From positions 124,001 to 188,000 of the IMG/VR virus record IMGVR_UViG_3300042484_002457: 64,000 nucleotides of DNA; one strand, 5' to 3'. Shown piece after piece: positions 4,155 through 32,476 of this stretch; the stretch's first letter is position 1, and every line of letters starts with the position of its first letter. The position numbers were made by a program, and so were the translations under genes. The notes beneath the pieces are model-generated. The model had not been told where the DNA came from. It worked only from the letters and a program-made list of their open reading frames with translations, and did no database searches.

Positions 4155-4176
4155 ATACTATTCTTTCTATTATAAT
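4148..4176 (+). promoter_or_regulatory. sigma70-type early promoter
   Basis: TTGACA (4148-4153), 17 nt spacer, TATAAT (4171-4176); ATG follows at 4183. Confidence 0.8.
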
Positions 4177-4182
4177 CATACT

Positions 4183-4797
4183 ATGACTAAAGATATTTAT
4201 CAAAAACGCATAATTTTAACGGATATCGACGGTGTCGCGCTTGACTGGGAATATGCGTTTGATGTGTATATGCGGCAACACGGTTTCAACAAACAAGAAG
4301 GCGGCCAATTCAAATACAACATTGGCACACGCTACGGAATTGATACAGAACAAGGCAAAAAGCTGATCAAGATTTTTAATGAATCGGCACACATGGGATT
4401 TTTGCCACCCTTGCGTGATTCTATGTATTATATTAAACGTCTGCACGAAGAGCACGGATACGTGTTTCACGCAATTACTTCATTGAGCAAAGACGAAAAC
4501 GCACAAGAACTTCGCCGCATGAATATTAAGAAATTGTTTGGCGAATCAACATTTGAAAAATTTGTGTTTTTGGACACTGGAGCAGACAAAGATGAAGCCC
4601 TGGAGCCATATCGTGACTCAGGGCTATGGTGGATTGAGGACAAAATTGTCAATTGTGAAGTTGGATACAATCTTGGACTCTATCCCTTGTTAATGGAACA
4701 CGGGCACAACCTGGACTACGAAAATCCTGCTATTCCTCGTGTTCGTAATTGGCGTGAAATTTATTCAATAATTGCTCCTAGCGAGAATACAATTTAA
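4183..4797 (+). CDS. HAD-superfamily 5'(3')-deoxyribonucleotidase-like protein
   Basis: ILTDIDGVALDW (DxDG), AITS, WIEDK motifs. Confidence 0.8.
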   Translation: MTKDIYQKRIILTDIDGVALDWEYAFDVYMRQHGFNKQEGGQFKYNIGTRYGIDTEQGKKLIKIFNESAHMGFLPPLRDSMYYIKRLHEEHGYVFHAITSLSKDENAQELRRMNIKKLFGESTFEKFVFLDTGADKDEALEPYRDSGLWWIEDKIVNCEVGYNLGLYPLLMEHGHNLDYENPAIPRVRNWREIYSIIAPSENTI

Positions 4798-5515
4798 GAA
4801 CATCACCAATGATCTTGTGTCGCTGTACGTCCCTGGATTCTAGTGGGCATACAGCGATTCCTTTGACCGGATGTGCTTGCAATCGATCACAAAGATCCAT
4901 CAAGCCGTTGTCGCCATTGGCGCGATCAGCTTGTTCTACGTCTCCTGTGATAACAATGCGACTGTTGACTCCAATACGAGTCATTAACATTTTGGCCTGT
5001 GCTGGTGTTGCGTTTTGCATTTCGTCTGCGATGATCCACGAGTGTTTGAATGTCCTGCCGCGCATGTAGGCCAGTGGCGCAATTTCAATGACTTGATCTT
5101 CAATCATGGCCACAATGTCTTGTGGTCTATAGTGTTCACGTAGTACGTCTAGCAAAGGCCTAGTCCATGGTTCCATTTTGGCGACCAAGTTGCCGGGCAA
5201 GAATCCGTGTTGTTCGCCTTCAACACCCACTGCTGGGCGTGTCATAATGATTCGTTCGCAGTCTCCTTCTTTTAATGCTTTGATTGCTGCCAACATGGCC
5301 AAGTAAGTTTTACCTGTACCTGCTGGCCCTGCAGTAACTACAATGTGCTGCCCTGGGTCTTGCAGTGCCATTACCAACTGTTCCTGATTTCGTGTTCGAG
5401 GGATCAAGTCTATGCGGCGCTGTGCCGCCTTAGGTGCCGGGTTAAAGGCTATGGTGTTTTCTACAGTTTGATTCATTCTCTTGTTTTGTGCTTTCGCAGC
5501 GCGGTTTCTACTCAA
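4778..5515 (-). CDS. phoH: PhoH-like ATPase
   Basis: GPAGTGKTYLA, GFLPG, YMRGRTF, IADEMQN, ITGDVEQAD; likely TTG start at 5515 behind AAGGAG. Confidence 0.92.
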   Translation of the reverse strand: MSRNRAAKAQNKRMNQTVENTIAFNPAPKAAQRRIDLIPRTRNQEQLVMALQDPGQHIVVTAGPAGTGKTYLAMLAAIKALKEGDCERIIMTRPAVGVEGEQHGFLPGNLVAKMEPWTRPLLDVLREHYRPQDIVAMIEDQVIEIAPLAYMRGRTFKHSWIIADEMQNATPAQAKMLMTRIGVNSRIVITGDVEQADRANGDNGLMDLCDRLQAHPVKGIAVCPLESRDVQRHKIIGDVLKLYSR

Positions 5516-5669
5516 AGTATTTTCTCCTTTAGTCCTCTCGGACCTGTTATTTACGGGCCTGCGCAACATGATAACACAACATTGATTTAACAACACCTGA
5601 TCACTAAATACTGACCTGGCGGCGTATTCCACAAAAACCCTGCTCTTGGTCAATCGACTAAATATACGC

Positions 5670-6278
5670 ATGGACCGAGAACTCTTTAAAGACCACACTG
5701 ATTACTGGCAAGTTGCTGACAACATCCGCGACATCTACATGAGCGACGGCAGTTTGACCACGCTGTTGGATTTTGAGCGTGTGCTGGACGAAGTTGATAT
5801 CTACGCATTTAAAAACTGGGAAATTGGCGAGCTTGTGGCCGGTCCTGAAATTGGCCGATATCGTGTGAGCTGCACATTTATGTGGCCACTCAAACTCATG
5901 CCCGATCCACGTGGCGGACGCAGACTGTTGAACTACGACTGCGAAATAAGTTATCAACGCAAAGAAATAAAGATTCCTGTAAAGATCACAGACCCCAGTG
6001 ATTATCGCCCTGGCACCAAAAAAGCCAAGTTAATGACACAGGAAGTGTGGCTGGTGGAAATTGTCATGCCCAAGGCCTTGATGAATGATATTCGCACTGG
6101 ATCAATTGAAATGGAAGATGAGGATATTGATCTTGAAGAACTGGATCAGGCCTATGAGCAAGATCTAGATCAGGAAGCCAATCAGAGTGATGAGGCTGCC
6201 GATGATGCACAGGCCAGCCTGGACACACCCAACCCTGGAGGCGCACCAGCTGCTGCGCCAGGACAACCACAGATTTAA
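5670..6278 (+). CDS. hypothetical phage protein with acidic C-terminus
   Basis: ATG 5 nt downstream of TAAATA (5659-5664); 202-aa ORF. Confidence 0.75.
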   Translation: MDRELFKDHTDYWQVADNIRDIYMSDGSLTTLLDFERVLDEVDIYAFKNWEIGELVAGPEIGRYRVSCTFMWPLKLMPDPRGGRRLLNYDCEISYQRKEIKIPVKITDPSDYRPGTKKAKLMTQEVWLVEIVMPKALMNDIRTGSIEMEDEDIDLEELDQAYEQDLDQEANQSDEAADDAQASLDTPNPGGAPAAAPGQPQI

Positions 6279-6280
6279 TC

Positions 6281-6847
6281 ATGAATACTTTTAATCCTTT
6301 TGACCCTGCCCGCCCCTTGCTGCTGGAAGGCCTACAGTACAAAGATCTTGACGGCATCATGAAACCCACAGTGCACGTGGATGAATTTTCTGCCAAACTG
6401 GGCGAAGATGCTGATGTGATTGTACTCAGCTTTTTTGTGCGCGACAAGCAAGCAGCACGTGATCTAATGGGCTGGTTTGAAAAAGGCTATGATTTTGTAC
6501 TAGATGCTGATGTCAGCCCCGGTGAAATCAAGCCTGGCCGGTATCTGGTGTATGTGGAAATTCGTCGCCGCAGCGCAGTACCTCGCCATGTTCAAACCTT
6601 GTTGGATGATCTTTCTACCCTGACAGAATTTGAGCCTGAAGACTGGCAGTTTGTGTATGAGGATGGTGACTTTGGCTGGGACCAGGATGAATTTATCAAA
6701 CGCATTCCACTAACACCCGACGCATATAGAGCCAGAAATGAATCTGATCTAAATGAAATGAGAGCTGCTGCCGGCTTGAAGCCAGTGCAGATTCATACTC
6801 CGCGGAGTGATGTCAAGGCATTAATGGCCGCAGCAGGGATATTGTAA
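6281..6847 (+). CDS. hypothetical phage protein
   Basis: 188-aa ORF coupled to the next gene by TAATG. Confidence 0.75.
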   Translation: MNTFNPFDPARPLLLEGLQYKDLDGIMKPTVHVDEFSAKLGEDADVIVLSFFVRDKQAARDLMGWFEKGYDFVLDADVSPGEIKPGRYLVYVEIRRRSAVPRHVQTLLDDLSTLTEFEPEDWQFVYEDGDFGWDQDEFIKRIPLTPDAYRARNESDLNEMRAAAGLKPVQIHTPRSDVKALMAAAGIL

Positions 6848-9800
6848 TGTTACTAAACCACTTGTTTGAAAACCGCCCCGGGGGCACACTAAACGAATTT
6901 GCACCTGCAGGTGGTGGTGGCAATCGCATGGGTGGTGGTCGTATTGGCGGTGGCGGAGATGACGATGGTGCCGGTGATGATCCCTACAAGTATCCACAGC
7001 CAGACCACTATAGCCGTAGCATAGACTTCTTTGGACGGTTTGAAGCAGATCATTTTGACGACGAAGAGTTTGACAAAGCCACAGGCGAGTTCCGGGGCTA
7101 CTGGGACGATCAAGAGGGCCGTGATCAGATTGCCTATTTCAAGTTTGACAATCCCCGACGCACCGGAGACGACGACCCAGGCATGGGCTGGTACTACGAG
7201 CCACAAAATGAAAGCATGGCAGAAGCACAAACTGAACCTGAGCAGCAACAGATTGATGCTAACCGTCAAGCAGCACTGCGTCGTGAGCGTGAACCTGGTG
7301 GCAGCGAAAAGATTGATGCCCAGCTGGCACAACAAAATGCACAGCGCCAAGAATATGAACGCACTGGCAACTTCTGGCTCAAGCGCAAAGACACACAAGA
7401 ACACATCAGTGATGAGTTTGTGGGCAAAGCTGCCGCAGTGGCTGCTGCACAAGACTTGTTGAAACAACAACCTGATTTGCGTGGCAACATTGTGATCACA
7501 GCATACGGCCCAGGCGAAACTCAGGGTGTGGCGGAAGGCTTCAAGAACATGTACGCAGAGTTCTCTGGATACGGAAACTACATGCAAGGTCGTGCTGTCA
7601 ATGTATTCAACAAAGCTGGCTTGGAGATTGTCAGCAAAGATTACACAGAAGATGATGACATACAAACCTATGTTGTAAAGGGTGACCGCCAAGCTATCGA
7701 AAAAGCCGGCGAGTTCTTGGAACGCAATCCCGAACAGTTTGGCGGATATCACTTTGTCAAGCAAGGTGTGGCGGAAGGCGGATATCCTGAAGTTGACCAT
7801 ATGCCAGGTCCCACTATAAAGAGAACACAGACTGGTTGCAAAAGATGCCACGGCAAGGGCTATGTTTATAAAACACCAGACGGTGAAGTTCATCCTATGA
7901 ATCGTCCAGATGCCAAGAAATACAAATGTGGCAAATGTGATGGTATTGGGTTTGTCAAAGTAGCAGAGCAAGGTGTGGCGGAAGGCTCACAGGATAATGG
8001 AATTAGTTTTCGTGTACAAAAGGGTAAAAATAAATTTGTCACTACCATGACAGTTAATAACGAGCAGGTGGGTGTATACCAATATGATGCTACTACAGGT
8101 CGTAGCATAGCCGAGGTTTATCCAGAATTCAAGGGCAAAGGATTTGGTAAATTATTGGTTTTACATGCTATCTATACCGCGGCCAAATTAGGATTAGATT
8201 TCCAAGAAGATGAATCAAGAACTGCTGAGTATGATAATGTGTTAGACAGTTTGAGTAGCAACAGTTATATTGTAGATGATGATGGATATTGGTACGTTAC
8301 TGGTGAGGGCGAACAATACCTACAACAATCATTAAAACAAGGTGTGGCGGAAGGCAAGAGAATGAAAACTGCCAGCGGCATGTATCGTGACCAGCATACT
8401 GGAGTTGCCTACAGAGGAAAAACAGGACAAGATGGAAACGATAGTTATATGACTCCTGATTACTTGATTCAAAAGTATCAAGAGCGTTTAGCGCAAATTG
8501 CATCAGGTCCATACAAGCGTCCTAAAGAAGTAGCACAACTAAAATCTCGTATTGCTAAACTACAAGGTCAGCAAGGTGTGGCGGAAGGTGCTCCTATTGT
8601 AGTGGCACAGGCTCCTATTCATATTCGCAATCCTAAGAAACAACAAAGTCGTCAAGACAAGCCACTTACAGCATACCAACAAGGTGTTGCAGCACAGGGC
8701 AAGCCATACAAGAATCCGCATCCGTTTGATCCTAAAGCAGGCGCAGATGTGAACTACGACCATAATCAATATCGTGCTGGATATAAGAAGCAAGGTGTGG
8801 CGGAAGGCTCCTTGGAAGAAATAGACCGTAGAGGATTCTTAAAAGGCATGGGTGCAGCGGCAGTAGCAGGCACTGGACTATCACCTATGCCTGCGAAAGC
8901 CTGGTTTTTCTTTATAATACCATTACCTAACACTAACCCAGATGCAGCGGCAAATGCATGCATGCCTCCGACTGTCCAGGTCGGACAACAGGTAAATTTT
9001 CAAAACGAATTACAGGTCATACAAAAAATACACGGAGTCTCTAATAGATGCCAAAATCCAAATATGCCTGTGGCTGTCACTATTGGCAAACCTGAACCCG
9101 TTCAAGCACCAGTAGTAAAAGAACCTCCTAATCAAAAAACACCTCCGAATTACGCATCAAGAATTATAGCTAGAATAAGACCAAACATTCATTATTCTGG
9201 CGACACCTCAGGTAATCCACGTGCAGAAATTGAAGTTCGAGTATCTTCTGATGGTACAATTACCGGAGTAAAATTAGAAAAATCAAGCGGTAACTCAGAG
9301 TGGGACCAGGCTGTAATTGATGCTGTTAAAAAAACCCAAACAATGCCTTTAGATTCTACTGGTAATGTTCCATCTATTATGATAATGGGTTTTAGACCAA
9401 TGGATAATCAATCTTTACAAAGAGAAAGCGTTGACCAAGGTGTGGCGGAAGGCGGTGAGAAAGATCGTCAATGGTCCAACAAAGACATGGAGAGGCTGCG
9501 TGTTGCTACCAGAGACTTTGATGATATAATGGCATCTGATGGACCTGACCAAACCAAGCACGATTTAATTAAGAAGCGAATTCAAACAAAACCAATGGCA
9601 GGTCCTAAAGGCGTATTGCCGGAGGAAGGTGTGGCGGAAGGCGGATACAGCGGTATCGACGATACTGACACCGTGGGCTTTAGCGTCAACAGTGAACGGG
9701 CATACAATGCAGTAATGGCTCGCTTTGGCGACCAGATTGATCATGACGAAACTTCGGGTATTCTGTATGTGCCTGCACGTTTGTGGCCCAAAGTAGAAAT

Positions 9801-10014
9801 GGTAGCTTTTGATGCCGACGGCGAAGGTGCTACACAAACTGATGGCTTGGACGAAGGCGAGAAAGTTGGCAACATGGATGCTGATGCATTTGATGCTGCC
9901 ATGGCCCGCCTTAAAAAGCTAGCAGGCGCAGGACCAATGAAAACAGTTTATGACCCCAACAAACGTGTGTATCGTAATGTGCCCACAGCAGTTCAACCAG
10001 GTACCAAAAAATGA
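6847..10014 (+). CDS. modular polyprotein (putative packaged internal protein) with QGVAEG-linked modules including a CxxCxGxG zinc finger, a GNAT domain, and a Tat signal plus TolA/TonB C-terminal domain
   Basis: 1055-aa ORF; eight Q/E-GVAEG linkers; CKRCHGKG...CGKCDGIG; VYPEFKGKGFGKLL; DRRGFLKG; SSGNSEWDQAVIDAV. Confidence 0.8.
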   Translation: MLLNHLFENRPGGTLNEFAPAGGGGNRMGGGRIGGGGDDDGAGDDPYKYPQPDHYSRSIDFFGRFEADHFDDEEFDKATGEFRGYWDDQEGRDQIAYFKFDNPRRTGDDDPGMGWYYEPQNESMAEAQTEPEQQQIDANRQAALRREREPGGSEKIDAQLAQQNAQRQEYERTGNFWLKRKDTQEHISDEFVGKAAAVAAAQDLLKQQPDLRGNIVITAYGPGETQGVAEGFKNMYAEFSGYGNYMQGRAVNVFNKAGLEIVSKDYTEDDDIQTYVVKGDRQAIEKAGEFLERNPEQFGGYHFVKQGVAEGGYPEVDHMPGPTIKRTQTGCKRCHGKGYVYKTPDGEVHPMNRPDAKKYKCGKCDGIGFVKVAEQGVAEGSQDNGISFRVQKGKNKFVTTMTVNNEQVGVYQYDATTGRSIAEVYPEFKGKGFGKLLVLHAIYTAAKLGLDFQEDESRTAEYDNVLDSLSSNSYIVDDDGYWYVTGEGEQYLQQSLKQGVAEGKRMKTASGMYRDQHTGVAYRGKTGQDGNDSYMTPDYLIQKYQERLAQIASGPYKRPKEVAQLKSRIAKLQGQQGVAEGAPIVVAQAPIHIRNPKKQQSRQDKPLTAYQQGVAAQGKPYKNPHPFDPKAGADVNYDHNQYRAGYKKQGVAEGSLEEIDRRGFLKGMGAAAVAGTGLSPMPAKAWFFFIIPLPNTNPDAAANACMPPTVQVGQQVNFQNELQVIQKIHGVSNRCQNPNMPVAVTIGKPEPVQAPVVKEPPNQKTPPNYASRIIARIRPNIHYSGDTSGNPRAEIEVRVSSDGTITGVKLEKSSGNSEWDQAVIDAVKKTQTMPLDSTGNVPSIMIMGFRPMDNQSLQRESVDQGVAEGGEKDRQWSNKDMERLRVATRDFDDIMASDGPDQTKHDLIKKRIQTKPMAGPKGVLPEEGVAEGGYSGIDDTDTVGFSVNSERAYNAVMARFGDQIDHDETSGILYVPARLWPKVEMVAFDADGEGATQTDGLDEGEKVGNMDADAFDAAMARLKKLAGAGPMKTVYDPNKRVYRNVPTAVQPGTKK
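7522..9642 (+). repeat. eight dispersed in-frame direct repeats, consensus CAAGGTGTGGCGGAAGGC
   Basis: Copies start at 7522, 7762, 7969, 8338, 8572, 8791, 9436 and 9625; 14-nt core GGTGTGGCGGAAGG is invariant; periods 240/207/369/234/219/645/189 nt. Confidence 0.95.
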
Positions 10015-10166: not shown

Positions 10167-10597
10167 GAAATTTTATCAATCTAATAGAAGCAGTGCAATC
10201 TGGTTGCCCACCAGCTACCCAGAGCATTGAATTGAATCTAAAAAATCGTCAAAAAGCCATTGAAGAATACCATTATGGTCCGTTGAATCCCAACGAGCCC
10301 AATCAAGAATACTGGGCTGAATTGGCTGACAAATGGAACACCAATGACATTGAATCAGTCAAAAACAACCGCTGCGGAAATTGTGCTGCATTTGATATCA
10401 CAGACAAAATGCTAGACTGTATTGCCAAAGGCATTGGCTCAGAGCCTGGGTCAGACCCACAAGGCACAATTGATGCTGGCGATTTAGGCTATTGTAAGTT
10501 TTTGAAATTCAAGTGTGCTGCACTGCGCACCTGTGATGCCTGGGTTGAAGGCGGCCCTGTAACAGATAAAAAAGATGAGAGCACAAGAATTCGTTGA
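10163..10597 (+). CDS. Cys-rich hypothetical protein
   Basis: CGNC...GYC...KC...TCDAW; N-terminus MRNFINLIE. Confidence 0.7.
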   Translation: MRNFINLIEAVQSGCPPATQSIELNLKNRQKAIEEYHYGPLNPNEPNQEYWAELADKWNTNDIESVKNNRCGNCAAFDITDKMLDCIAKGIGSEPGSDPQGTIDAGDLGYCKFLKFKCAALRTCDAWVEGGPVTDKKDESTRIR

Positions 10598-10871
10598 AGC
10601 TGATCTGGGTACTAACCCACGTAGAGCAGCCCGACAAGGGTCAAGACCTCCACGCGGGCACAACCCTGTGCCGCGCTATCGTAGTAAAAAAGCCGAGCCT
10701 GACCAGGAACAACTGGACGAGCTGATGTTCATGAACATGAGTCCCTGCAAAACTGACTGCTCGGGACACAGAGCAGGCTACAAATGGAGCAAGGATCGCG
10801 GCGGTGTCAGCACTGCGTCCTGGAGCGACAGCTTTAATCGCGGTGCTGAAATAGCCCGAGCAGGCTATTAA
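10575..10871 (+). CDS. hypothetical protein, putative internal head protein
   Basis: N-terminus MRAQEFVE; CKTDCSGHRAGYKW module after LDE. Confidence 0.7.
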   Translation: MRAQEFVEADLGTNPRRAARQGSRPPRGHNPVPRYRSKKAEPDQEQLDELMFMNMSPCKTDCSGHRAGYKWSKDRGGVSTASWSDSFNRGAEIARAGY

Positions 10872-17451: not shown

Positions 17452-17475
17452 TTGTAAGAAGTGCTAAATATCTCT

Positions 17476-17943
17476 ATGTGGATTTTGCACTTTCTTCCTG
17501 ACGCTGTAATACTGTGGTTCACCAACCTGTTGCTGTTTGCGGGTGTTGCACTCACAGTGGCTGGATTTTTTATTCATCGAATTCCGTCCCCGTTGATATA
17601 TCAGTATCAATTGCCATTCAAAATAGTAGGCGTTGTTCTGCTGGTACTGGGCGTGTATTTTCGTGGCGGCTATGCTATAGAAATAACCTGGCGCGAGCGT
17701 GTGGCAGAAGTAGAAGCCCAGTTGCGAGTTGCTGAACAACAATCAGCTCAAGAAAACACACGTATAGAAACTCGAGTAGTTAAAAAGACCGAATACATCA
17801 CACGTCGCGGATCAGATATTGTTCAGTATGTTGACCGTGAAATCGTCCGGTATGACACCAAGTTTGCTCCTGGCGGACAGTGTGAAATACCACGAGAATT
17901 TATCAAGGCCCACAATCAGGCCGCTGAGGCACCACCCAAATGA
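17476..17943 (+). CDS. putative inner-membrane spanin (Rz-like)
   Basis: N-terminal TM helices, coiled coil and C-terminal Cys; near endolysin and lipoprotein genes. Confidence 0.55.
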   Translation: MWILHFLPDAVILWFTNLLLFAGVALTVAGFFIHRIPSPLIYQYQLPFKIVGVVLLVLGVYFRGGYAIEITWRERVAEVEAQLRVAEQQSAQENTRIETRVVKKTEYITRRGSDIVQYVDREIVRYDTKFAPGGQCEIPREFIKAHNQAAEAPPK

Positions 17944-19118
17944 AATTCAAAGACTTTCGAACAGAAGAAAAAGTACGCTTGGATCCCAAGTGTTGGACAG
18001 GTAAAAAAATTGGCAACCCCAAGACCAAGGTCAAGGGTGGAGTTAGAGTCAACAACTGTGTGCCCGCTGAATCTGTTGAAGAGGCTGTAAATCCTGCACA
18101 ACAGGCTGCTATTGCTATTGCTAAAAAGAAAAAGAAACAAGGTCTGAAGGAAGGTACAGACAATCCCTACGGATATCGCAAAGGGCAAACTGTAAAACTT
18201 GGCAATGGTCAACAAGGTCGTGTCATTGATATTTTTGATGACAGCATTGAAGTTTTACTAGTTGGCGGCCGAACAGTCACAGTAGACTTCCGTGATGCAC
18301 GGGTAATCGACGAGCAAGGTGTGGCGGAAGATGCTGTGGCAGATTTCTTGGCTCGTGGTGGAGAAATACAAAAAGGCAAGCTACACAAACCACGCAAGGG
18401 TGAAACTTGGCAAGGATCATCACACATTGGTGCAGCAGGCGGAAAAGGTACCAAAGGCACAGTGTCGGGTCGAGCTGCTAACACCAATCCCAAAGGTGGC
18501 AAGCCAGTGGTCAGTGCTGAAGGTTTCAACCCTGAATACAACGACGAAGCAGGCATGGCCGACAACAATCTTGAAACCTTGGAACGTGCTGTGGCAGGTA
18601 TTGACGACCTAATTCAAACCGGTGATAACTTGCCAGAGTGGTGTCAAGAAAAGATCGCAGTGGCCAAGTCAATGTTGGTGGCTGTATGGGACTACATGGA
18701 AAGTGAAGAAGACTCTGAGGAAGTAGATCCTGAAGTGGACGAAATGTTTGAAGCCATGCAAGACCTGGTGTCAGAAATGGCCCAGAAAAATCGTGTGAGT
18801 GAAGATCTAGTGTGGGAACAGTTTGAAGCCATGCCGGATAACGTACTGTACGAAACAGCAGCTTGGCGTCGCAAAGAAGGCAAAAGCGCCAAAGGTGGAC
18901 TCAACGCCAAGGGTGTGGCCAGCTATCGCAGAGAGAATCCTGGTTCAAAACTACAAACAGCAGTCACAACCAAGCCCAGCAAACTCAAGCCAGGATCCAA
19001 AGCAGCCAAGCGCCGTAAATCATTCTGTGCAAGAATGGGCGGAGTCAAAGGACCAATGAAAAAGCCCAATGGCAAGCCCACACGCAAAGCTCTAGCCCTA
19101 CGTAAATGGAACTGCTAA
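17940..19118 (+). CDS. modular polyprotein, putative internal head protein
   Basis: MKFKDFRTE start; short modules bounded by x-x-E sites; QGVAED linker at 18315; basic C-terminal module ...RRKSFCARM...RKWNC. Confidence 0.75.
   Translation: MKFKDFRTEEKVRLDPKCWTGKKIGNPKTKVKGGVRVNNCVPAESVEEAVNPAQQAAIAIAKKKKKQGLKEGTDNPYGYRKGQTVKLGNGQQGRVIDIFDDSIEVLLVGGRTVTVDFRDARVIDEQGVAEDAVADFLARGGEIQKGKLHKPRKGETWQGSSHIGAAGGKGTKGTVSGRAANTNPKGGKPVVSAEGFNPEYNDEAGMADNNLETLERAVAGIDDLIQTGDNLPEWCQEKIAVAKSMLVAVWDYMESEEDSEEVDPEVDEMFEAMQDLVSEMAQKNRVSEDLVWEQFEAMPDNVLYETAAWRRKEGKSAKGGLNAKGVASYRRENPGSKLQTAVTTKPSKLKPGSKAAKRRKSFCARMGGVKGPMKKPNGKPTRKALALRKWNC
18315..18331 (+). repeat. ninth copy of the QGVAE linker repeat
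   Basis: CAAGGTGTGGCGGAAGA, in frame (QGVAED). Confidence 0.9.
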
Positions 19119-19119
19119 A

Positions 19120-19389
19120 ATGAAATATTGGGCTATTGCAATATTGTTGTGCCTGTCAGGATGTAGTACTGTGGTGCCTGTGGTTGCTAAGTTTCCCGAA
19201 GCACCGGGCCAACTGGTAAGTGAGCCTTGTCCCAATCTTAAAAAATTAAATGATGATGCGGCCTTGAGCAACATTGCACGTACCATTACTGAAAATTACA
19301 CCGCGTACTACGAATGCGCAGTCAAACTAGACGCATGGATTGAGTGGCACGCAAAACAAAAAATAATATTTGAAGGAGCCAACAAATGA
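19120..19389 (+). CDS. lipoprotein, putative outer-membrane spanin (Rz1-like)
   Basis: Lipobox LSGC after a hydrophobic signal; Pro-rich; two further Cys. Confidence 0.7.
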   Translation: MKYWAIAILLCLSGCSTVVPVVAKFPEAPGQLVSEPCPNLKKLNDDAALSNIARTITENYTAYYECAVKLDAWIEWHAKQKIIFEGANK

Positions 19390-20006
19390 GCATATTAACA
19401 CTGGAACAACTAAAACAACTGGTACCGGGAAACCCGTATATAGAAGACTGGCACGAGGCCCTGGACCAGTTGCTGGATGACTACGGTATCAACACACCAC
19501 AACGGGTGGCACACTTTGTTGCACAATGCGCCCACGAATCAGGTGGGTTCAAGTTCATCAAAGAAAACTTGAACTACAGTGCAGCCGGCCTCAACACCAC
19601 GTTCCGTAAGTATTTCCCCACACTGGAATCAGCTCGTTCCTATGAGCGCAAGCCAGAAAAGATTGCCAACCGGGTGTATGCCAACAGAATGGGCAACGGC
19701 GACGAAGCATCAGGTGATGGCTGGCGCTACTGCGGACGTGGGCTGATTCAGCTCACAGGCAAAGACAACTACACATTCTTTGCGGGCAGCCTAGGCATTC
19801 CCGTGGAAGAAGCTGCTGAATACTTGGCCACATTTGAAGGCGCAGCACAGTCAGCCTGTTTCTTCTGGGAACAAAACAACTTGAATCGCTTTGCTGACGT
19901 CAATGATGTGCGGGGACTAACTCGTGCCATCAATGGCGGCGCAATTGGCCTAGAAGACAGACAAAAACACACCGAACATGCACTACATGTGCTGACCGGA
20001 CACTAA
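19386..20006 (+). CDS. glycoside hydrolase family 19 endolysin
   Basis: FVAQCAHESGGF, ENLNYS, YCGRGLIQLTGKDNY, INGG. Confidence 0.93.
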   Translation: MSILTLEQLKQLVPGNPYIEDWHEALDQLLDDYGINTPQRVAHFVAQCAHESGGFKFIKENLNYSAAGLNTTFRKYFPTLESARSYERKPEKIANRVYANRMGNGDEASGDGWRYCGRGLIQLTGKDNYTFFAGSLGIPVEEAAEYLATFEGAAQSACFFWEQNNLNRFADVNDVRGLTRAINGGAIGLEDRQKHTEHALHVLTGH

Positions 20007-20023
20007 AATAACAGGAGCCAACC

Positions 20024-20530
20024 ATGAGCAAAAAACAATTACCTCCCGGCAAAATTACCAAATCAGAAGAAGACTGGATGACCAAGAAATGGCGTCCCAT
20101 GATGGCCATTATGTACATGACCGCATGTTTGTTTGACTTTGTGTTCTTCCCTATTATGTTTACTGCGGTACAGTTCTGGGAAGTCAGTGCAGCCAACGAT
20201 GCCTTCCGTCAGTGGGCACCAATAACACTGCAAGGCGGCGGCTTGTTCCACGTGGCCATGGGTGCTGTACTGGGCGTTAGTGCATGGAGTCGTGGACAAG
20301 AGAAAATGGCTGGTGTGACTGGTGGCTCAGCGCCAGCACCTGGCTGGGGGTCAATGCCTGTAGCCAACAACAGCTGGGGCAGCGCACCTGGTGCACAAAC
20401 TGCTGCATACACTCCAGCACCCAGCTGGGGATCAACACCTGTGGCCAGCAACAGCTGGGGCAGCGCACCTGTACAAACAGGTTGGGGAGGCAAAAAGGCT
20501 CCGCCTGAAGCCGAATTCCCTGTATTATAA
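20024..20530 (+). CDS. putative holin with low-complexity WG-repeat tail
   Basis: KWRPMMA followed by TM helices, LFHVAMGAVLGV...RGQEK; directly after the endolysin. Confidence 0.65.
   Translation: MSKKQLPPGKITKSEEDWMTKKWRPMMAIMYMTACLFDFVFFPIMFTAVQFWEVSAANDAFRQWAPITLQGGGLFHVAMGAVLGVSAWSRGQEKMAGVTGGSAPAPGWGSMPVANNSWGSAPGAQTAAYTPAPSWGSTPVASNSWGSAPVQTGWGGKKAPPEAEFPVL
20333..20471 (+). repeat. imperfect ~58-nt direct repeat, period 81 nt, in the holin tail
   Basis: PAPGWGSMPVANNSWGSAP / PAPSWGSTPVASNSWGSAP. Confidence 0.85.
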
Positions 20531-20761: not shown

Positions 20762-20815
20762 CATTTGACCTTGTGCCCCTGGGTCCTGTATAATTAAATG
20801 TACAGGACCTTTTTC

Positions 20816-21577
20816 ATGACTGACTACTACGCCACCCTGGGTGTTGCAAAAACTGCCACTGCCGAGGAAATCAAACGAGCCTATCGTCGACTGGCTTCGC
20901 AACACCATCCTGATCGGGGTGGCAACACTGCCCAATTTCAACAGATTCAAGCGGCCTATGACACACTAGGCGATGCTGCCAAACGTGCCGCTTACGACAA
21001 CCCACAGCCGCAATTTGGTGGATTTGGTTTTCAACAAGGCCAAAACATCCATGACATTTTCAGTCAGATGTTTGGGCAACAACCACGTCGTGGCCACATA
21101 CGCATGACCATTGGAGTTGACTTAGTGGATGTGATCAATGGCAGCACAAGAACTGTGCAACTGGGCACAACACAGGGCTCCAACACAGTGGAAATTGCTA
21201 TACCCCGGGGTATTGACAACGGAGACACAGTGCAGTATGGCGGAATTGGTCCCGGGGGTTCAGACCTCATGGTACAGTTTAGAGTCAACCCCATGCCCAA
21301 TTGGCGCAGAGAAGGTATAAATCTGCACACCGAAGTTCAAGTGTCAATTTGGCAACTGATCCTGGGCAGTGAAATCACCATGACTGCACTCACAGGCAAT
21401 GAGCTTACTATTACAGTGCCCCCAATGACTCAACCCAATACTGTGATGCGCCTACGAGCACATGGAGTACATCATAGGTCTGGACAGCAGGGCGACATCA
21501 TGGTAAGAATTGTGGCCCAAATTCCCCAGAACATTCCCGCCGAAGTCATGGCAGCAATACAGCAACACTGCCCGTAA
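20816..21577 (+). CDS. dnaJ: DnaJ/CbpA-like co-chaperone
   Basis: DYYATLGV, HHPDRGG J-domain, G/F region and C-terminal domain; no zinc finger. Confidence 0.92.
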   Translation: MTDYYATLGVAKTATAEEIKRAYRRLASQHHPDRGGNTAQFQQIQAAYDTLGDAAKRAAYDNPQPQFGGFGFQQGQNIHDIFSQMFGQQPRRGHIRMTIGVDLVDVINGSTRTVQLGTTQGSNTVEIAIPRGIDNGDTVQYGGIGPGGSDLMVQFRVNPMPNWRREGINLHTEVQVSIWQLILGSEITMTALTGNELTITVPPMTQPNTVMRLRAHGVHHRSGQQGDIMVRIVAQIPQNIPAEVMAAIQQHCP

Positions 21578-21591
21578 TGTCAGTAGATCAC

Positions 21592-21620
21592 TTGACACCA
21601 ACGACTGTAAGTAGTATAAT
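21592..21620 (+). promoter_or_regulatory. sigma70-type promoter of clpA
   Basis: TTGACA, 17 nt spacer, TATAAT, then AAGGAG. Confidence 0.8.
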
Positions 21621-21644
21621 AATCACTGTAACTCAAGGAGCTTT

Positions 21645-23909
21645 ATGAATCCCACCGCCGAAATTGAACACATTGTTGAACAATCTGTAGCAATTGCTCA
21701 AACATTTCAACACGAATATGTCACAACCGAGCACCTGCTGCTGGCCATGGTTCGATATGCACCATTTCGAAAAACACTGGAGAATTTTGGTGTAGAAATT
21801 GACATGCTGGATCAAGACCTAACCAGTTATCTGAGTGGGTTACAAAATCTTGTTAAAGAAAATTCAGATCTAACACCCAAAAAGACCACGGCTCTGGAGC
21901 GTATTTTTAATCGTGCCAATGTGCAGGTGATGTTTACCGGGCGTAGACAAATGTCCCTGATTGATGTTTATCTTTCAATCATGGCTGAAGGCCACAGTCA
22001 CGCACAGTACTATCTCATGAGATACGGTGTGAAGAAAGTGGAATTTGTGGAGTTCTGGCAAAAGAACTATTCTGCCCAGGCCAGTGCCACTGGCATGAGT
22101 GTGAATCAAGCCAATGACATTCTCAACGAGTACTGCGTTGATCTCAGTGGTCGTGCTGCCAAGAACGAACTTGAGCCCATGATTGGTCGAGACACTGAAC
22201 TACAGGAAATGGTCACTGTGCTGGCACGACGCTTCAAGGCCAACGTGCTCATGGTAGGCGATCCTGGCGTGGGCAAGACTGCCATCATTGAAGGCCTGGC
22301 CCAGGAAATTCAAGCCGGTCGTGTGCCTGAGTTTCTCAAGGGTCACGAAGTATGGAGTTTGGAAATTGGCTCGCTGCTGGCAGGATCAAAGTATCGTGGT
22401 GATTTTGAGGAAAAGTTCAAGGCCGTGGTGTCAGCACTGGAAGCCAAGAAAAACTGTATCTTGTTTGTGGACGAAGCGCACACCATGAAGGGTGCTGGTG
22501 CAGGATCTAGCTCTAGCCTGGACTTTGCCAACATGCTGAAGCCGGCTATTACCAAGGGCAGTTTAAAAATCATTGCGTCAACCACCTGGGAAGAGTATTA
22601 CGAAAGCTTTGAAAAGGATCGTGCCCTGATGCGACGTTTCTATCGTCTCAGCATTGACGAACCTGATGCTGCGACCACAGAAAAGATTCTTATTGGACTC
22701 AGTCCACGCCTGGAACAGTTCCACAATGTGTTGATTGACACTGAAGCTATTACTGCTGCTGTGGACTTGGCCAATCGCTACATTCATGATCGCAAGAACC
22801 CTGACAAAAGTATTGACTTGATTGATGCTGCTTGTGCTCGGGAACGTGTGAAAGATGCAGGCTTGACAACCATCAACAAAGGCATGATTGAAGAACAGCT
22901 GAGCCGTGTGACCAGTGTGCCTGTAGACAAGTTACAGAACGAGCGCAGTGCCAAGATTGTGGAGCTAGAAGGCAATATCAAGCAACGGCTGTATGGACAG
23001 GATTCAGCTGTGGACACTGTGCTGGAACGTGTGTACATTAACTTTGCTGGTATTGGCAACGAGCGACGCCCCATGGCATCATTCCTGTTCTTGGGCCCCA
23101 CAGGCACAGGCAAAACTGAATTGGCTCGACTGCTGGCCGACAACTTGGACATGAAGCTGTTGAAATATGACATGAGCGAGTTCCAAGAGCGTCACAGTGT
23201 GAGTGGACTTATTGGTGCTCCCCCAGGTTACGTGGGCTTTGAAGACGGCAACATCGGCGGCGGCAAGCTGATTGCAGACATCAGCAAGAATCCTTTTTCA
23301 ATTATCTTGTTTGACGAGATTGAAAAGGCACACCCTGACGTTGCCAACATCATGCTGCAAATGCTAGACGATGGTGTGCTGACCAGTTCAAATGGCAAGA
23401 AAGTCAGCTGCAAGAACACCATTATCATCATGACGTCTAACCTGGGCGCACGTGATAGTGAAAGCAATGCAATTGGCTTTGGATCACAAGAAAAAACTGG
23501 TGAGGACGATCGTGCACTCAAAGAGCACTTCCGCCCCGAACTGCGAAATCGTATTGATGCTATCTGCAAGTTTGGGCGCCTGGACCAACTGGCCATTAAA
23601 AAGATTGTGCTGAAGTTTGTGGCTGAATTGCAAACCAGTCTTGGCAACAAAAACATACGACTCACTGTGACCGAAGCCATGGTAGAACACTTGGCCGAAA
23701 AAGGTTATGATCCCAAGATGGGTGCGAGGCCTCTGGGTCGCAAGATTGACGAGTTACTGCGTGTGCCACTCAGCAAGCGTATCTTGTTTGATCGCCTGGA
23801 CAACTGTGATATCACAGCTGACTTGGTGGAAGGTGGGGTCAAGTTTGATATTGCAACACACGAGACCAGCTTGCTAGACAGTGACGGAATTATTCGTTTC
23901 CCAGCATGA
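21645..23909 (+). CDS. clpA: ATP-dependent Clp protease ATP-binding subunit ClpA
   Basis: Clp N domain (EHLLLA), GDPGVGKT, LFVDEAH, GPTGTGKTE, GAPPGYVG, FDEIEKAHP, MGARPL. Confidence 0.95.
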   Translation: MNPTAEIEHIVEQSVAIAQTFQHEYVTTEHLLLAMVRYAPFRKTLENFGVEIDMLDQDLTSYLSGLQNLVKENSDLTPKKTTALERIFNRANVQVMFTGRRQMSLIDVYLSIMAEGHSHAQYYLMRYGVKKVEFVEFWQKNYSAQASATGMSVNQANDILNEYCVDLSGRAAKNELEPMIGRDTELQEMVTVLARRFKANVLMVGDPGVGKTAIIEGLAQEIQAGRVPEFLKGHEVWSLEIGSLLAGSKYRGDFEEKFKAVVSALEAKKNCILFVDEAHTMKGAGAGSSSSLDFANMLKPAITKGSLKIIASTTWEEYYESFEKDRALMRRFYRLSIDEPDAATTEKILIGLSPRLEQFHNVLIDTEAITAAVDLANRYIHDRKNPDKSIDLIDAACARERVKDAGLTTINKGMIEEQLSRVTSVPVDKLQNERSAKIVELEGNIKQRLYGQDSAVDTVLERVYINFAGIGNERRPMASFLFLGPTGTGKTELARLLADNLDMKLLKYDMSEFQERHSVSGLIGAPPGYVGFEDGNIGGGKLIADISKNPFSIILFDEIEKAHPDVANIMLQMLDDGVLTSSNGKKVSCKNTIIIMTSNLGARDSESNAIGFGSQEKTGEDDRALKEHFRPELRNRIDAICKFGRLDQLAIKKIVLKFVAELQTSLGNKNIRLTVTEAMVEHLAEKGYDPKMGARPLGRKIDELLRVPLSKRILFDRLDNCDITADLVEGGVKFDIATHETSLLDSDGIIRFPA

Positions 23910-31300: not shown

Positions 31301-32476
31301 AACACCAAGACTGGCTATATTGAATTCCGTAGCCCCGGTGGTGACTGGCTGGACAGCAATTTTGACAAGATTGAAAACACCCTGTTGCGTTTTACTGTGG
31401 CCCTGAGTGCTGCTATCAATCCAGAAGCATACCGCAAAGAATACTTGACCAAGCTGTACAAGTTGTTGTCCGAAGGCATGGCGGACAAGAGTGACGTAAA
31501 CATTATTCAGTTGTTCTCCAACTACTCAGCTGGTGAACTGGACAAAGCTGCTCTAATCCGTCAAGTGCGTCAAAAGCAACTGGCTCGCAATGTTGCCAAG
31601 GGCAAGGCCACAGGCAAGATGTGGTGGAATGTTTCTAGACCAGGATACATGGGCAGCATCGAAGTTGTTGCTAACAGCAAAGAAGAAGCCATTGATGTTG
31701 CATTACAGCCGAGCAATTATCCAAACTGGGCAAGTGCTAGAAATACATTACAGGCTAAACCATTACGTCCATACCAAGAAAAGCCAAGCGCACCTGCACA
31801 ACCTGCTGCGGACAATCAAGGCAACTGGGGTATCTGGTTGGATGCTGCAGAACGCTTTGTCCGAATACCTCGCACCGAAACTGGTGGCGACGGGCAAGCC
31901 TTGCGTAGATTCTCTAGCCAAGCGGCTGCAATGGCGTTCTTGGAGCGAACTCGAGAAGAGAATCCACTAATGAGAAGAGACATCAGCATTCGCGAAATCC
32001 CTGCAGACTATCAGTGGCCACCCGTTGCACCGGCTGTTAACCGCAATACGCTGACACCAACCGGTCCTGGACCTTGGGAAGTGTTTAGAATCAGTGACGG
32101 GTCAAGTGTAGCAGAGCTGGGGCAGACCAACCGCATGAGTGCTGAAGTAGAAGCTCGCGGAGTGATTGATCAACGTGGCGAAGCACCTGAACTGTATGGA
32201 GTAAGAACTCGTCAGTCTGACGCAGCACAAGGTGGCACAGTTGATGTAGGGGGAGAAACACCTGCAACAGCACCGCAGACACTGACTCGTCCCGGACAAG
32301 GCCAACAACAGTTCACAGGCACATGGCGAGTGTTAGATCCTGAAGACCGTGAGATCTATCGCTTTAGTGGTGTGGGCAACAACCAATCAGATGCCAATCG
32401 TGTGGCCCTGAACTGGATGCGTCAAAATCCTGGTCGCATGCAAGCAGGTGTCACAGTGGTCCCGGAGATGACCTAA
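28355..32476 (+). CDS. multidomain polyprotein: nucleotidyltransferase, HExxH metallopeptidase-like and putative amidoligase domains plus C-terminal modules
   Basis: GSNAAYNYTPHSDVDLH; AHELAHVRQ; GMEFEM...EPDGSL...LEFVSPP...TNDSTGLHINIS...IEFRSPGG. Confidence 0.75.
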   Translation: MNIEELDSFNLADAVKFHNQLNPRLWDQREHLKPDVHAKLMEIARDFQEFLGVPDLEVKDITVSGSNAAYNYTPHSDVDLHLVVDMPDAKNSEVFRELFDAKKFQYNAEHDIRIGGYDVELYVQDAEQEHHSQGIYSLLQNRWISVPKRRKPDVDDISVKSKYQDVGHRIEAAIRGGDAAQMEDVWNKLRVMRKQGLEREGEFAPENIVFKMLRNNGTIGNLKQARQAVRDRELSLAEVNRPKQRVHYGFVSESPDGVNPSTKMFLEEDDAESLVTEFIFTTADKLGIKRIPKIHIHTNDDWSRENNSFGMFVPDTYELHVSLINRHPMDVMRTIAHELAHVRQHEIKPVKPGDGETGSDVENEAHAIAGIVMRDFASSHPEYFEKPAVSESSGYIPTRAQAQDPRFKMALTVDIKPGQTGKEANKLALQTDAQGRPALLMKTANLREGRMPQPSQGQGQYRDLNKPLGPETPPTMPAGTVKVDVSDVYDWYKLGSHISNLKGLGKHDFGAGPPSTIISFGDEETEHKYIQDLEKTGLTTTDIDPKDPKQPPGMKRQKTDPTYNVAEDDIVESLRQEFALLEDEYISEIKMTGKNLRAEAAQTGAQAGMEFEMIVPNVETEELDPEYEPDWDQDQRTRSFSDIRDFFHDGDYNGRREADNLMEEIQNEYEEWQAEQTDEAWARDGVDYMRDFVEVNDLFDREEAIDTARDEVIDANPDLPPESKDFQDLLRARLDELQEQFVLESFEDQGRIYNDALQAFAEEQRDEYDERSFLDDKYPMMTDIQSNFDISWPHYYNINDGQDSGEVDVDQVADEFGSYMGKPVNASRQYHGGRREAGTYVVEPDGSLEGDNPGDGGLEFVSPPMPIDEMISDLNKVKAWADKTGCYTNDSTGLHINISVPNYSIDKLDYVKLAILMGDEYILDLFGRSGNTYAKSAMGKIKSALKQKPEASAQIMDLMKQGLDGAATKAIHTGITDKYTSINTKTGYIEFRSPGGDWLDSNFDKIENTLLRFTVALSAAINPEAYRKEYLTKLYKLLSEGMADKSDVNIIQLFSNYSAGELDKAALIRQVRQKQLARNVAKGKATGKMWWNVSRPGYMGSIEVVANSKEEAIDVALQPSNYPNWASARNTLQAKPLRPYQEKPSAPAQPAADNQGNWGIWLDAAERFVRIPRTETGGDGQALRRFSSQAAAMAFLERTREENPLMRRDISIREIPADYQWPPVAPAVNRNTLTPTGPGPWEVFRISDGSSVAELGQTNRMSAEVEARGVIDQRGEAPELYGVRTRQSDAAQGGTVDVGGETPATAPQTLTRPGQGQQQFTGTWRVLDPEDREIYRFSGVGNNQSDANRVALNWMRQNPGRMQAGVTVVPEMT

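What the first reader, a model, noticed from the sequence alone, without database searches (positions are those of the whole stretch)
17940..19118. Second linker-bearing polyprotein sits inside the lysis cassette between the two spanin genes
Seen: the same nucleotide linker (CAAGGTGTGGCGGAAGA, 18315) occurs about 8.7 kb from the main array, in a protein made of short modules bounded by TEE, VEE, LKE, VAE, SAE and LYE. The gene separates the Rz-like gene from the lipoprotein, GH19 and holin genes. Established: spanin pairs are normally adjacent or nested. Inference: the linker is a genome-wide joint that allows module exchange between different polyprotein genes.
Basis: partly seen in the sequence, partly recalled or inferred. 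Interest (0 to 1): 0.66.

Follow-up and report, generated by a model that had tools for sequence, protein, structure and literature searches.

The report
Modular phage head protein with cleavable linkers
The gene between the two spanin genes most likely encodes a T4-style internal head protein built from exchangeable modules, and its repeated QGVAE joint looks like both a head-protease cutting site and the point where modules are swapped between genes and phages.

Summary
Observation confirmed. The 16-nt linker CAAGGTGTGGCGGAAG lies at 18315 in a 392-aa ORF (17940-19118). The ORF is packed tightly between an Rz-like gene and a lipoprotein/GH19/holin set. The same 16-mer occurs 8 times in the 1055-aa polyprotein (6847-10014) and twice more elsewhere in the 209-kb phage record; chance expects about 0.

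Interpretation partly supported. Module exchange is real. The small beta-barrel module (18153-18314) sits in five different polyproteins of other lake phages. Nucleotide homology to different relatives switches exactly at the linker. The linker keeps a rare GCG codon far beyond synonymous saturation.

The main role of the linker is probably proteolytic. The clade is T4-like: near-complete 320-349 kb relatives encode gp21 protease, gp22 and gp23. Every module ends in hydrophobic-x-Glu. The N-terminus MKFKDFRTEE belongs to a leader family resembling the T4 capsid-targeting sequence MKTYQEFIAE. The C-terminal DUF6321 domain occurs in a cyanophage protein annotated as a virion protein in a record whose paper identified virion proteins by mass spectrometry.

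The position between the spanins is a derived rearrangement. Relatives place the gene before, between or after adjacent spanins, and T4 itself has e-ipIII-ipII. This is a new variant of known kinds. Cleavage and packaging are inferred, not shown.

The parts
17940..19118 (+). Gene for the 392-aa modular DUF6321 polyprotein (P0004), the subject of the finding
   Evidence: ORF. Pfam DUF6321 77.6 bits against a cut-off of 28.5. An identical copy lies on a second IMG/VR contig, L011.
17940..17969 (+). N-terminal leader MKFKDFRTEE, resembling the T4 capsid-targeting sequence; predicted to be removed after Glu9 or Glu10
   Evidence: 41 of 58 full-length family members start M[KR]..(E/D)(F/I)(I/L).E. 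T4 IPIII and IPII start MKTYQEFIAE. A cyanophage NMNAT annotated as a virion protein starts MKSFLQFLKE.
17970..18083 (+). Module A, a basic Cys-pair module (..DPKCW..VNNCVP..) ending SVEE48
   Evidence: Present or absent among relatives. A related module occurs in S-SCSM1 virion protein ORF29. A contig variant has a breakpoint near 18093.
18084..18152 (+). Module B, a short basic helix (NPAQQAAIAIAKKKK) ending LKE71
   Evidence: Recurs in many relatives bracketed by x-x-E sites. Helix 52-67 in the model.
18153..18314 (+). Module C, a small five-stranded SH3/KOW-like beta-barrel
   Evidence: pLDDT 91-94. Weak KOW/SH3 fold matches. Found in five other polyproteins, with homology bounded by the joints.
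18315..18331 (+). Linker CAAGGTGTGGCGGAAGA, encoding QGVAE|D: predicted prohead-protease site and mosaic junction
18330..18521 (+). Module D, basic, Gly/Lys-rich and predicted disordered, ending VSAE194
   Evidence: pLDDT below 50. Shared with L012/L013 after a different upstream module. Absent in co-occurring variants. Weak SutA-RBD hit below the cut-off.
18522..18722 (+). Module E, an acidic helical hairpin (NPEYNDEAGMADNNLE...)
   Evidence: Helices 203-258. Present in a subset of relatives, starting right after a joint.
18723..19115 (+). Module F, acidic helices plus the very basic DUF6321 domain (Pfam match 18879-19109); the constant C-terminal unit of the family
   Evidence: 26 K+R against 3 D+E in residues 305-392.
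17461..17943 (+). Rz-like i-spanin candidate, with a 4-nt overlap onto the polyprotein start
   Evidence: phrog_4952 7.6e-10; Rz-like phrogs weak. Adjacent to the o-spanin homologue in relatives L012, L027, L063 and L069.
19120..19389 (+). o-spanin candidate, a lipoprotein with lipobox LSGC
   Evidence: Pfam LysC 23.9 bits (cut-off 27); phrog_456 1.2e-5.
19386..20006 (+). GH19-type endolysin
   Evidence: phrog_181 1.7e-78.
20024..20530 (+). Holin-like membrane protein
   Evidence: GTA_holin_3TM 1.5e-4, below the cut-off; phrog_3427 1e-4.
6847..10014 (+). Main 1055-aa polyprotein (P0003) carrying eight copies of the same linker (7522-9641)
   Evidence: TonB_2 C-terminal domain in one module. 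Its N-terminal module is internal in the L099 polyprotein, preceded by QQGVAEG.

Best explanation
The gene encodes a T4-type internal head protein in polyprotein form.

Proposed mechanism:
- It is expressed late, in one tightly coupled operon with the spanin, endolysin and holin genes.
- Its roughly 10-residue N-terminal leader targets the precursor to the scaffolding core of the prohead.
- The gp21-type prohead protease then cuts after Glu at the leader and at the inter-module joints SVEE48, LKE71, QGVAE130 and VSAE194, and possibly at later sites.
- This releases about six small products. They are two basic peptides, an SH3-like barrel, a basic disordered piece, an acidic helical piece and the very basic DUF6321 unit.
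- The basic products stay with the packaged DNA and enter the host with it.

QGVAE(G/D) is this clade's preferred cleavage joint. It is always encoded in the same frame by a nearly invariant 16-mer. Any crossover between two joints therefore gives an in-frame, cleavable fusion, so modules move between polyprotein genes and between phages.

Shown here: the sequence anatomy, the protease gene in relatives, module mosaicism at the joint, nucleotide over-conservation, and a virion-protein annotation on a DUF6321 homologue in a mass-spectrometry-annotated cyanophage record.

Inferred: targeting, cleavage, packaging, injection and the activities of the modules.
For: 1. T4-like clade. Near-complete relatives G001 (349 kb, 97%) and G002 (320 kb, 92%) encode Peptidase_S77 gp21 (80-81 bits) next to a scaffold protein and gp23 MCP (324 bits).
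2. Cleavage rule. T4 gp21 cuts after Glu, at ITE-6 and LTE-619 in Alt (PMC5694885). T4 gp23 reads FLTE at residues 62-65; that this is its cleavage site is from my memory. IPIII/IPII start MKTYQEFIAE followed by A.
3. Leader. 41 of 58 family members start M[KR]..(E/D)(F/I)(I/L).E. So do 85 of 677 neighbouring ORFs in the same contigs, against 1 of 1943 internal Met positions in the own genome. The S-SCSM1 NMNAT, annotated as a virion protein, starts MKSFLQFLKE (PMC9602691).
4. Virion association. DUF6321 lies in S-SCSM1 ORF29, annotated 'virion protein'. The S-P4 homologue is annotated 'T4-like structural protein'. In a Pelagibacter podophage the domain is a stand-alone gene between the scaffold and capsid genes. 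In cyanophage ACG-2014f it lies between gp16 and gp17.
5. Peptide-level selection on the joint. One QGVAE site in the own genome uses GGC GTG GCC. Relatives carry synonymous variants and QGMAE/SVAE forms.
6. Structure. The joint falls in low-confidence segments between confident folded units.
7. Module exchange at the joint.
8. Nucleotide over-conservation. GCG is 7% of Ala codons genome-wide and 3% at invariant DUF6321 alanines. It is used in 11 of 12 own joints and about 62% of joints in relatives.
9. T4 precedent for position: the order e (endolysin), ipIII, ipII is contiguous.
Against: - No protease, MCP or portal gene lies on the window's own record, which is a 58% fragment. The protease is inferred from relatives.
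- P0004's own leader has Arg or Thr at P3 (FRTE/TEE) rather than the Ile/Leu that T4 processing needs.
- No proteomic or cleavage data exist for this phage group.
- QGVAEG is far more specific than the loose gp21 motif, so another protease or another role is possible.
- DUF6321 also occurs in T7-like podophages, which to my knowledge lack a prohead protease (not tested here), so the domain does not depend on cleavage.
- The gene is persistently linked to lysis genes in at least 12 lineages, which could reflect a lysis role.
- Some [VILM]xE motifs also lie inside predicted helices of modules E and F, so the motif alone does not define the borders.
Confidence: 0.6

Rival explanations
1. The linker is primarily a DNA-level recombination joint, or a translational pause, between domains of an uncleaved multidomain late protein. 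The protein is not processed and need not be in the virion.
For: The 16-mer is conserved far beyond synonymous saturation and uses a rare Ala codon. Mosaic junctions coincide with it. Rare codons at domain borders are a known way to slow translation (my knowledge).
Against: The peptide is kept under synonymous change and in QGMAE/SVAE variants. Other module borders lack the 16-mer yet still end in hydrophobic-x-Glu. The leader and the virion evidence are left unexplained.
Confidence: 0.13
2. The protein has a lysis-related role, for example a cationic outer-membrane-active or regulatory partner of the spanin and endolysin. That would explain why it stays in the lysis cassette.
For: The gene lies beside spanin or GH19 genes in at least 12 distinct relatives, at three different positions. 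It is translationally coupled to them. The C-terminus is very cationic.
Against: There is no signal peptide or transmembrane segment. Most family members in other contigs have no lysis gene within 6 kb. DUF6321 sits in head or packaging modules in cyanophages and pelagiphages, and a homologue is annotated as a virion protein. T4 shows the same endolysin-to-internal-protein adjacency without a functional link.
Confidence: 0.1
3. The joints are cut by a protease other than the prohead protease, either host-encoded or another phage protease. Cutting happens in the cytoplasm or after injection, as proposed for polyvalent proteins.
For: QGVAEG is much more specific than known gp21 logos. Polyvalent proteins are thought to be processed after delivery (PMC5512222). 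The window encodes a ClpA-like ATPase just downstream.
Against: No peptidase domain was found in the four linker-bearing proteins. The motif matches the Glu-P1 rule of the protease the clade does encode.
Confidence: 0.12
4. The single linker copy in this gene is a chance match or an assembly chimera.
For: None found.
Against: 0.14 matches expected against 11 observed. An identical gene lies on an independent IMG/VR contig. Contigs from four lake metagenomes cover 17904-18402 or more with no differences.
Confidence: 0.01

Closest known systems
T4 internal proteins IPI, IPII, IPIII and Alt (capsid-targeting sequence plus gp21 processing)
   Same: A short N-terminal leader of the MK...F(I/L)xE type. 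Predicted cleavage after Glu. Basic products. A highly variable, recombining gene set in T4-like phages. The genes lie next to the endolysin gene in T4 (e-ipIII-ipII).
   Different: T4 IPs are single-unit proteins with one N-terminal cut. Here several unrelated modules are strung together and separated by iterated, near-identical joints, up to 8 per protein, conserved at the DNA level. There is no sequence homology to the IP bodies.
Polyvalent proteins of phages and conjugative elements (Iyer et al. 2017, PMC5512222)
   Same: Many unrelated small domains and enzymes in one polypeptide. Mosaic shuffling between elements. Proposed delivery with the DNA and proteolytic release of units.
   Different: Those proteins are defined by signature domains and are thought to be self-processed by an in-cis zincin-like peptidase. 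No such domain was found here. Processing would be in trans, by the prohead protease, at a uniform joint.
Processed head and ejection proteins of giant phages (phiKZ, 201phi2-1, SPN3US)
   Same: Many head proteins are cut after Glu at a short motif by a gp21-related protease. Propeptides carry multiple sites.
   Different: The motif there is (A/S/G)-x-E. The substrates are not arrays of exchangeable modules with a repeated nucleotide-conserved linker.
Pfam DUF6321 proteins of cyanomyoviruses and pelagiphages
   Same: The same C-terminal basic domain, with 534 phage records matching. Location in head or packaging modules. Co-occurrence with the KCW..NCV and VWPSAYA modules.
   Different: The cyanophage versions examined lack the QGVAE joints. 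The pelagiphage version is a stand-alone 81-aa protein without a leader.
Separated two-component spanins (Kongari et al. 2018, PMC6139136)
   Same: i-spanin and o-spanin as non-overlapping genes in one cassette. A foreign gene can sit between them, as with the homing endonuclease in Shivani and phiR201.
   Different: The gap here is 1,176 bp, and about 4.7 kb in relative L030. That exceeds the roughly 1 kb maximum reported in that survey. The insert is a structural-type gene, not a homing endonuclease.

Membership tests
Pfam DUF6321 | Match to the PF19846 profile above the gathering score | tested here: met
   77.6 bits against a cut-off of 28.5, residues 314-390, full profile 1-72. Confirmed on the genome.
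T4-type internal head proteins | N-terminal capsid-targeting sequence of about 10 residues ending in a processing Glu | tested here: met
   MKFKDFRTEE compared with T4 MKTYQEFIAE. The family consensus M[KR]..(E/D)(F/I)(I/L).E holds in 41 of 58 members. P3 in this particular copy is non-canonical (R/T).
T4-type internal head proteins | Phage encodes a gp21-type prohead protease (Peptidase_S77) | tested here: inconclusive
   Absent from the own 58%-complete record. Present above the cut-off in both near-complete relatives, G001 and G002.
T4-type internal head proteins | Actual cleavage by the protease and presence inside mature heads | not testable with these tools
   Indirect only. S-SCSM1 ORF29, which carries DUF6321, is annotated 'virion protein' in a record whose paper marks mass-spectrometry-detected virion proteins (PMC9602691).
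Polyvalent proteins (Iyer et al. 2017) | Signature domains such as the MPTase zincin peptidase or the LPD families in the same polypeptide | tested here: not met
   Pfam scans of P0001-P0004 and six related polyproteins gave only DUF6321, DUF5872 (weak), DUF6267 and TonB_2.
Polyvalent proteins (Iyer et al. 2017) | Several unrelated domains in one chain with mosaic architectures across elements | tested here: met
Two-component spanin (flanking genes) | i-spanin: N-terminal membrane anchor plus a periplasmic coiled-coil domain | tested here: inconclusive
   Hydrophobic N-terminal segments and a coiled-coil-like stretch by eye. phrog_4952 7.6e-10; Rz-like phrogs only 0.005-0.02.
Two-component spanin (flanking genes) | o-spanin: lipobox-bearing small lipoprotein adjacent to or nested in the i-spanin gene | tested here: inconclusive
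   Lipobox LSGC is present. Pfam LysC scores 23.9 bits, below the cut-off of 27. phrog_456 1.2e-5. The gene is not adjacent here, but its homologues are adjacent in L012, L027, L063 and L069.

The most novel reading that the evidence does not exclude
The in-frame 16-nt joint is an evolved, DNA-level-maintained exchange site. It lets T4-like jumbo phages of lakes reshuffle injected effector modules among several polyprotein genes and between co-infecting phages. The five residues it encodes ensure that every new fusion is cut apart by the head protease. On this reading it is a built-in cassette system for virion-delivered proteins, not just a cleavage motif.
Probability: 0.35. Interest if true: 0.8.

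Novelty: new variant of a known kind. Interest (0 to 1): 0.66.

Why it matters
If correct, this clade of abundant lake jumbo phages packages many small proteins and enzymes as bead-on-a-string precursors. The uniform joints would serve two purposes, protease site and in-frame recombination point.

That would extend the T4 internal-protein and capsid-targeting paradigm to a combinatorial system. It would give a first functional context to DUF6321, which matches 534 phage records and has no literature. It would also provide a simple sequence rule, leader plus joints, for predicting virion-delivered effectors, likely counter-defence or takeover factors, in uncultured T4-like phages.

It also documents spanin genes split by more than the largest gap in the 2018 spanin survey.

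Tried and rejected
- **Chance or assembly artefact:** rejected.
- **Codon bias as the cause of the identical 16-mers:** rejected. GCG is 7% of Ala codons genome-wide and 3% at invariant DUF6321 alanines.
- **Close relatives in cultured phages:** none found. Only the DUF6321 domain and the GH19 core match.
- **T4 late promoter TATAAATA near the cassette:** no copy within 16-21 kb, and 3 in the window is not above chance.
- **Fold search of the whole model:** no PDB match at E<=0.001, only generic KOW/SH3-like hits for module C. BFVD returned other DUF6321 proteins.
- **Pfam SutA-RBD hit in module D:** 18 bits against a cut-off of 29.3, kept only as a lead.
- **Literature:** DUF6321 returned 0 papers and 'QGVAE' returned only alpha-synuclein papers.
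- **First guess at the S-SCSM1 DUF6321 protein (ORF92):** wrong. The right one is ORF29.
- **CTS control set:** it was not a clean negative. 85 of 677 neighbouring ORFs carry the same leader. I read this as showing the leader is widely used, not as a failed test; the internal-Met control is 1 of 1943.
- **Alignment A1:** it misplaced the module C rows, so module C in the model rests mainly on the single sequence.
- **Joint 18331->18531:** it has only 23 letters on its short side and may come from a related phage.
- **Not run:** Complex prediction (protease with substrate) and the large protein searches were judged not decisive.
Full report
**1. What is there**

The window is bases 124,001-188,000 of a 209,543-bp IMG/VR virus record. 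CheckV puts the record at 58% complete; GC is 44.6%. The ORF 17940-19118 (+, 392 aa, P0004) contains the 17-mer CAAGGTGTGGCGGAAGA at 18315.

Its first 16 nt recur eight times, exact or with one change, in the 1055-aa ORF 6847-10014 (P0003). Shuffles expect 0.14 matches.

Genome-wide there are two further copies in an 829-aa ORF at C1:982-3471 (P0001). A twelfth QGVAE lies in a 634-aa nucleotidyltransferase plus ligase-like protein at C1:32097-34001 (P0002). That one is written with other codons, GGC GTG GCC. Sequence flanking the 16-mer is not conserved.

**2. The flanking genes**

- 17461-17943 is Rz-like (phrog_4952 7.6e-10).
- 19120-19389 is a lipoprotein with lipobox LSGC and weak Rz1/LysC matches.
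- 19386-20006 is a GH19-type endolysin (phrog_181 1.7e-78).
- 20024-20530 is holin-like.

The five genes abut or overlap by 4 nt, so they form one operon.

The spanin genes are 1,176 bp apart. The 2018 spanin survey reports about 1 kb as the extreme case. It also describes a homing-endonuclease gene inserted between the spanins of T5-like phages (PMC6139136).

**3. The phage**

The own record lacks head genes. Two near-complete relatives carrying the same gene family are G001 (349 kb, 97% complete) and G002 (320 kb, 92% complete). Each encodes the T4 head module in order: an acidic core protein, the gp21 protease (Peptidase_S77, 80-81 bits), a gp22-like scaffold, and the gp23 MCP (324 bits).

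The MCP N-terminus aligns with T4 gp23 such that ILE34 or LKE42 corresponds to T4's FLTE65; that FLTE65 is the gp23 cleavage site is from my memory. The clade is thus T4-like jumbo phage. It is common in lakes: at least 24 lake-water runs hold this stretch.

**4. Anatomy of the protein**

Comparison with 65 distinct family members from IMG/VR, an AlphaFold model and motif positions together give these units:

| Unit | Residues | Description | Ends in |
|---|---|---|---|
| Leader | 1-10 | MKFKDFRTEE | TEE10 |
| A | 11-48 | basic Cys-pair module | SVEE48 |
| B | 49-71 | basic helix | LKE71 |
| C | 72-125 | five-stranded SH3/KOW-like barrel, pLDDT above 90 | joint follows |
| Joint | 126-130 | QGVAE | VAE130 |
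| D | 131-194 | basic, predicted disordered | VSAE194 |
| E | 195-261 | acidic helical hairpin | — |
| F + DUF6321 | 262-392 | acidic helices plus very basic domain (26 K+R, 3 D+E in 305-392) | — |

Only the last unit is constant in the family. The others come and go, always at borders of the type (V/I/L/M/S)-x-E.

**5. Why a protease site**

T4 gp21 cuts after Glu. Examples are ITE-6 and LTE-619 in Alt (PMC5694885). From my memory, gp23 is cut at FLTE65 and the IPIII/IPII leader after FIAE10; the sequences are.

The joints here are QGVAE|G/D, QGMAE|G, SVAE|A, SVEE|A and SITE|D. All fit that rule, with a small P1' residue.

The peptide is maintained under synonymous change. One own-genome site and many sites in relatives show this. 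So selection acts on the peptide and not only on the DNA. In the model the joint lies in low-confidence segments between confident domains.

**6. Why a head protein**

- *The leader.* 41 of 58 full-length family members begin M[KR]..(E/D)(F/I)(I/L).E, for example MKSHEFITE, MKINEIITE and MKTFKQFLNE. These closely resemble T4's MKTYQEFIAE. In T4 the first 10 residues suffice for encapsidation, and residues 8 and 10 govern processing (PMC9026906).
- *Spread of the leader.* The same leader starts 85 of 677 other ORFs in these contigs, including NMNAT-like enzymes. It fits only 1 of 1943 internal Met positions in the own genome.
- *Cyanophage S-SCSM1.* In this cyanophage the NMNAT annotated as a virion protein starts MKSFLQFLKE. 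ORF29, annotated 'virion protein', carries DUF6321 together with the KCW..NCV and VWPSAYA modules. The paper reports that virion proteins were identified by mass spectrometry (PMC9602691).
- *Other phages.* The S-P4 homologue is labelled 'T4-like structural protein'. In a Pelagibacter podophage, DUF6321 is an 81-aa gene between the scaffold and capsid genes. In ACG-2014f it ends an 839-aa protein between gp16 and gp17.

**7. Module exchange**

Module C occurs in five other polyproteins of 483-1368 aa, at residues 140 to 607. Homology starts just after an x-x-E and stops at the (V/M)AE joint.

At the nucleotide level the window gene matches L096/L097 up to and including the 16-mer, then diverges. 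It matches L012 only from the 16-mer onward. L014 shares only the 16-mer.

Contigs from lake metagenomes show co-occurring forms:
- One lacks modules C and D (18131->18527, with EAGVDENY in between).
- One lacks D (18331->18531). This is weak, with only 23 nt on its short side.
- One has the N-terminal part replaced (17900->18093).

Modules of P0001 and P0003 likewise reappear in other contexts in relatives.

**8. DNA-level conservation**

In 63 distinct DUF6321 genes, thirteen invariant four-fold-degenerate codons are near saturation. The commonest third base averages 0.53, and Ala GCG is 3%. GCG is 7% of Ala codons genome-wide.

The joint, by contrast, reads GGT GTG GCG in 11 of 12 own sites and in most sites of relatives: GCG 30 of 48, GGT 38 of 48. 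Relatives G001-G004 carry 2-6 strict copies each, always on the gene strand, and none in the reversed control.

So the 16-mer is either homogenised by repeated exchange or selected as DNA or RNA. Because it is always in the same frame, any joint-to-joint crossover is in-frame.

**9. Position in the lysis cassette**

Relatives show three orders:
- i-spanin, gene, o-spanin, GH19: own record, L014-18, and L030 with 4.7 kb between the spanins.
- i-spanin, o-spanin, gene, GH19: L012/13.
- gene, i-spanin, o-spanin, GH19: L027, L063, L069.

Most other family members have no lysis gene nearby. The split-spanin order is thus a derived rearrangement within a mobile neighbourhood.

T4 has the contiguous order e (endolysin), ipIII, ipII. 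Linkage of internal-protein and endolysin genes therefore has a precedent without implying a lysis role.

**10. Verdict**

The best model is a leader-targeted, gp21-processed internal head polyprotein whose joint doubles as an in-frame exchange point (confidence about 0.6).

It differs from T4 internal proteins in its multi-module arrays and its iterated, DNA-conserved joint. It differs from polyvalent proteins in having no signature or self-processing peptidase domains (PMC5512222).

No paper in the library mentions DUF6321. Cleavage, packaging, injection and module functions remain untested.

Noticed in passing
window 6847-10014: One module of the main polyprotein is a TonB_2/TolA-like C-terminal domain (residues 768-845, 2e-17). 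It is preceded by a TAT-signal-like RRGFLKG motif and a hydrophobic stretch. This is an envelope-type domain inside a putative head-delivered precursor.
   Followed up: partly
G000:C1:32097-34001 (L010:2098-3999): A 634-aa protein joins a Pol-beta-type nucleotidyltransferase-like N-terminus to a DUF6267 ligase-like domain (KWDG motif) through QGVAE. That joint is written with different codons (GGC GTG GCC), so it is conserved at the peptide level only.
   Followed up: partly
G000:C1:982-3471 (L009:982-3468): An 829-aa protein with two 16-mer joints plus a QGMAEG. It carries a conserved module (ITRRILMQRTDLL..YGP..DEIGSSDVSGWV). The same module recurs in the polyproteins of L047 and L096, twice in L096.
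   Followed up: partly
window 32476-33462 and 10575-10871; G000:C1:81449-82093 (-): Further ORFs start with the same leader type (MRAQEFVTEL, MRAQEFVEAD, MKIQDIITES). They are candidate additional head-targeted proteins.
   Followed up: no
L011-L090 neighbourhoods: About one in eight ORFs of 100 aa or more near DUF6321 genes in related contigs starts M[KR]..EF(I/L/V).E. Several are NMNAT-like enzymes (..FGRMNPPTTGHLKLIDK..), matching the virion-annotated NMNAT of cyanophage S-SCSM1.
   Followed up: partly
window 17461-17620: The Rz-like protein has about 50 extra N-terminal residues with additional hydrophobic segments upstream of the part that matches spanin profiles. These residues are conserved in relatives.
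   Followed up: no
window 18330-18380: The start of module D (DAVADFLARGGEIQKGK) gives a weak hit to the SutA RNA-polymerase-binding domain, at 18 bits against a cut-off of 29.3. It is a lead for a host-takeover role, not a finding.
   Followed up: no
window 20330-20500: The holin-like protein ends in a repeated SWGS(A/T)P(V/G) motif region.
   Followed up: no
window 20798-23909: A DnaJ-like protein and a 754-aa ClpA/ClpB-like AAA+ ATPase follow the lysis cassette. They are conserved in the same order in relatives L012 and L018.
   Followed up: no
L030 (G003) 3531-8957: [quoted passage not shown] A 658-aa, six-joint DUF6321 polyprotein and further genes lie between them.
   Followed up: partly
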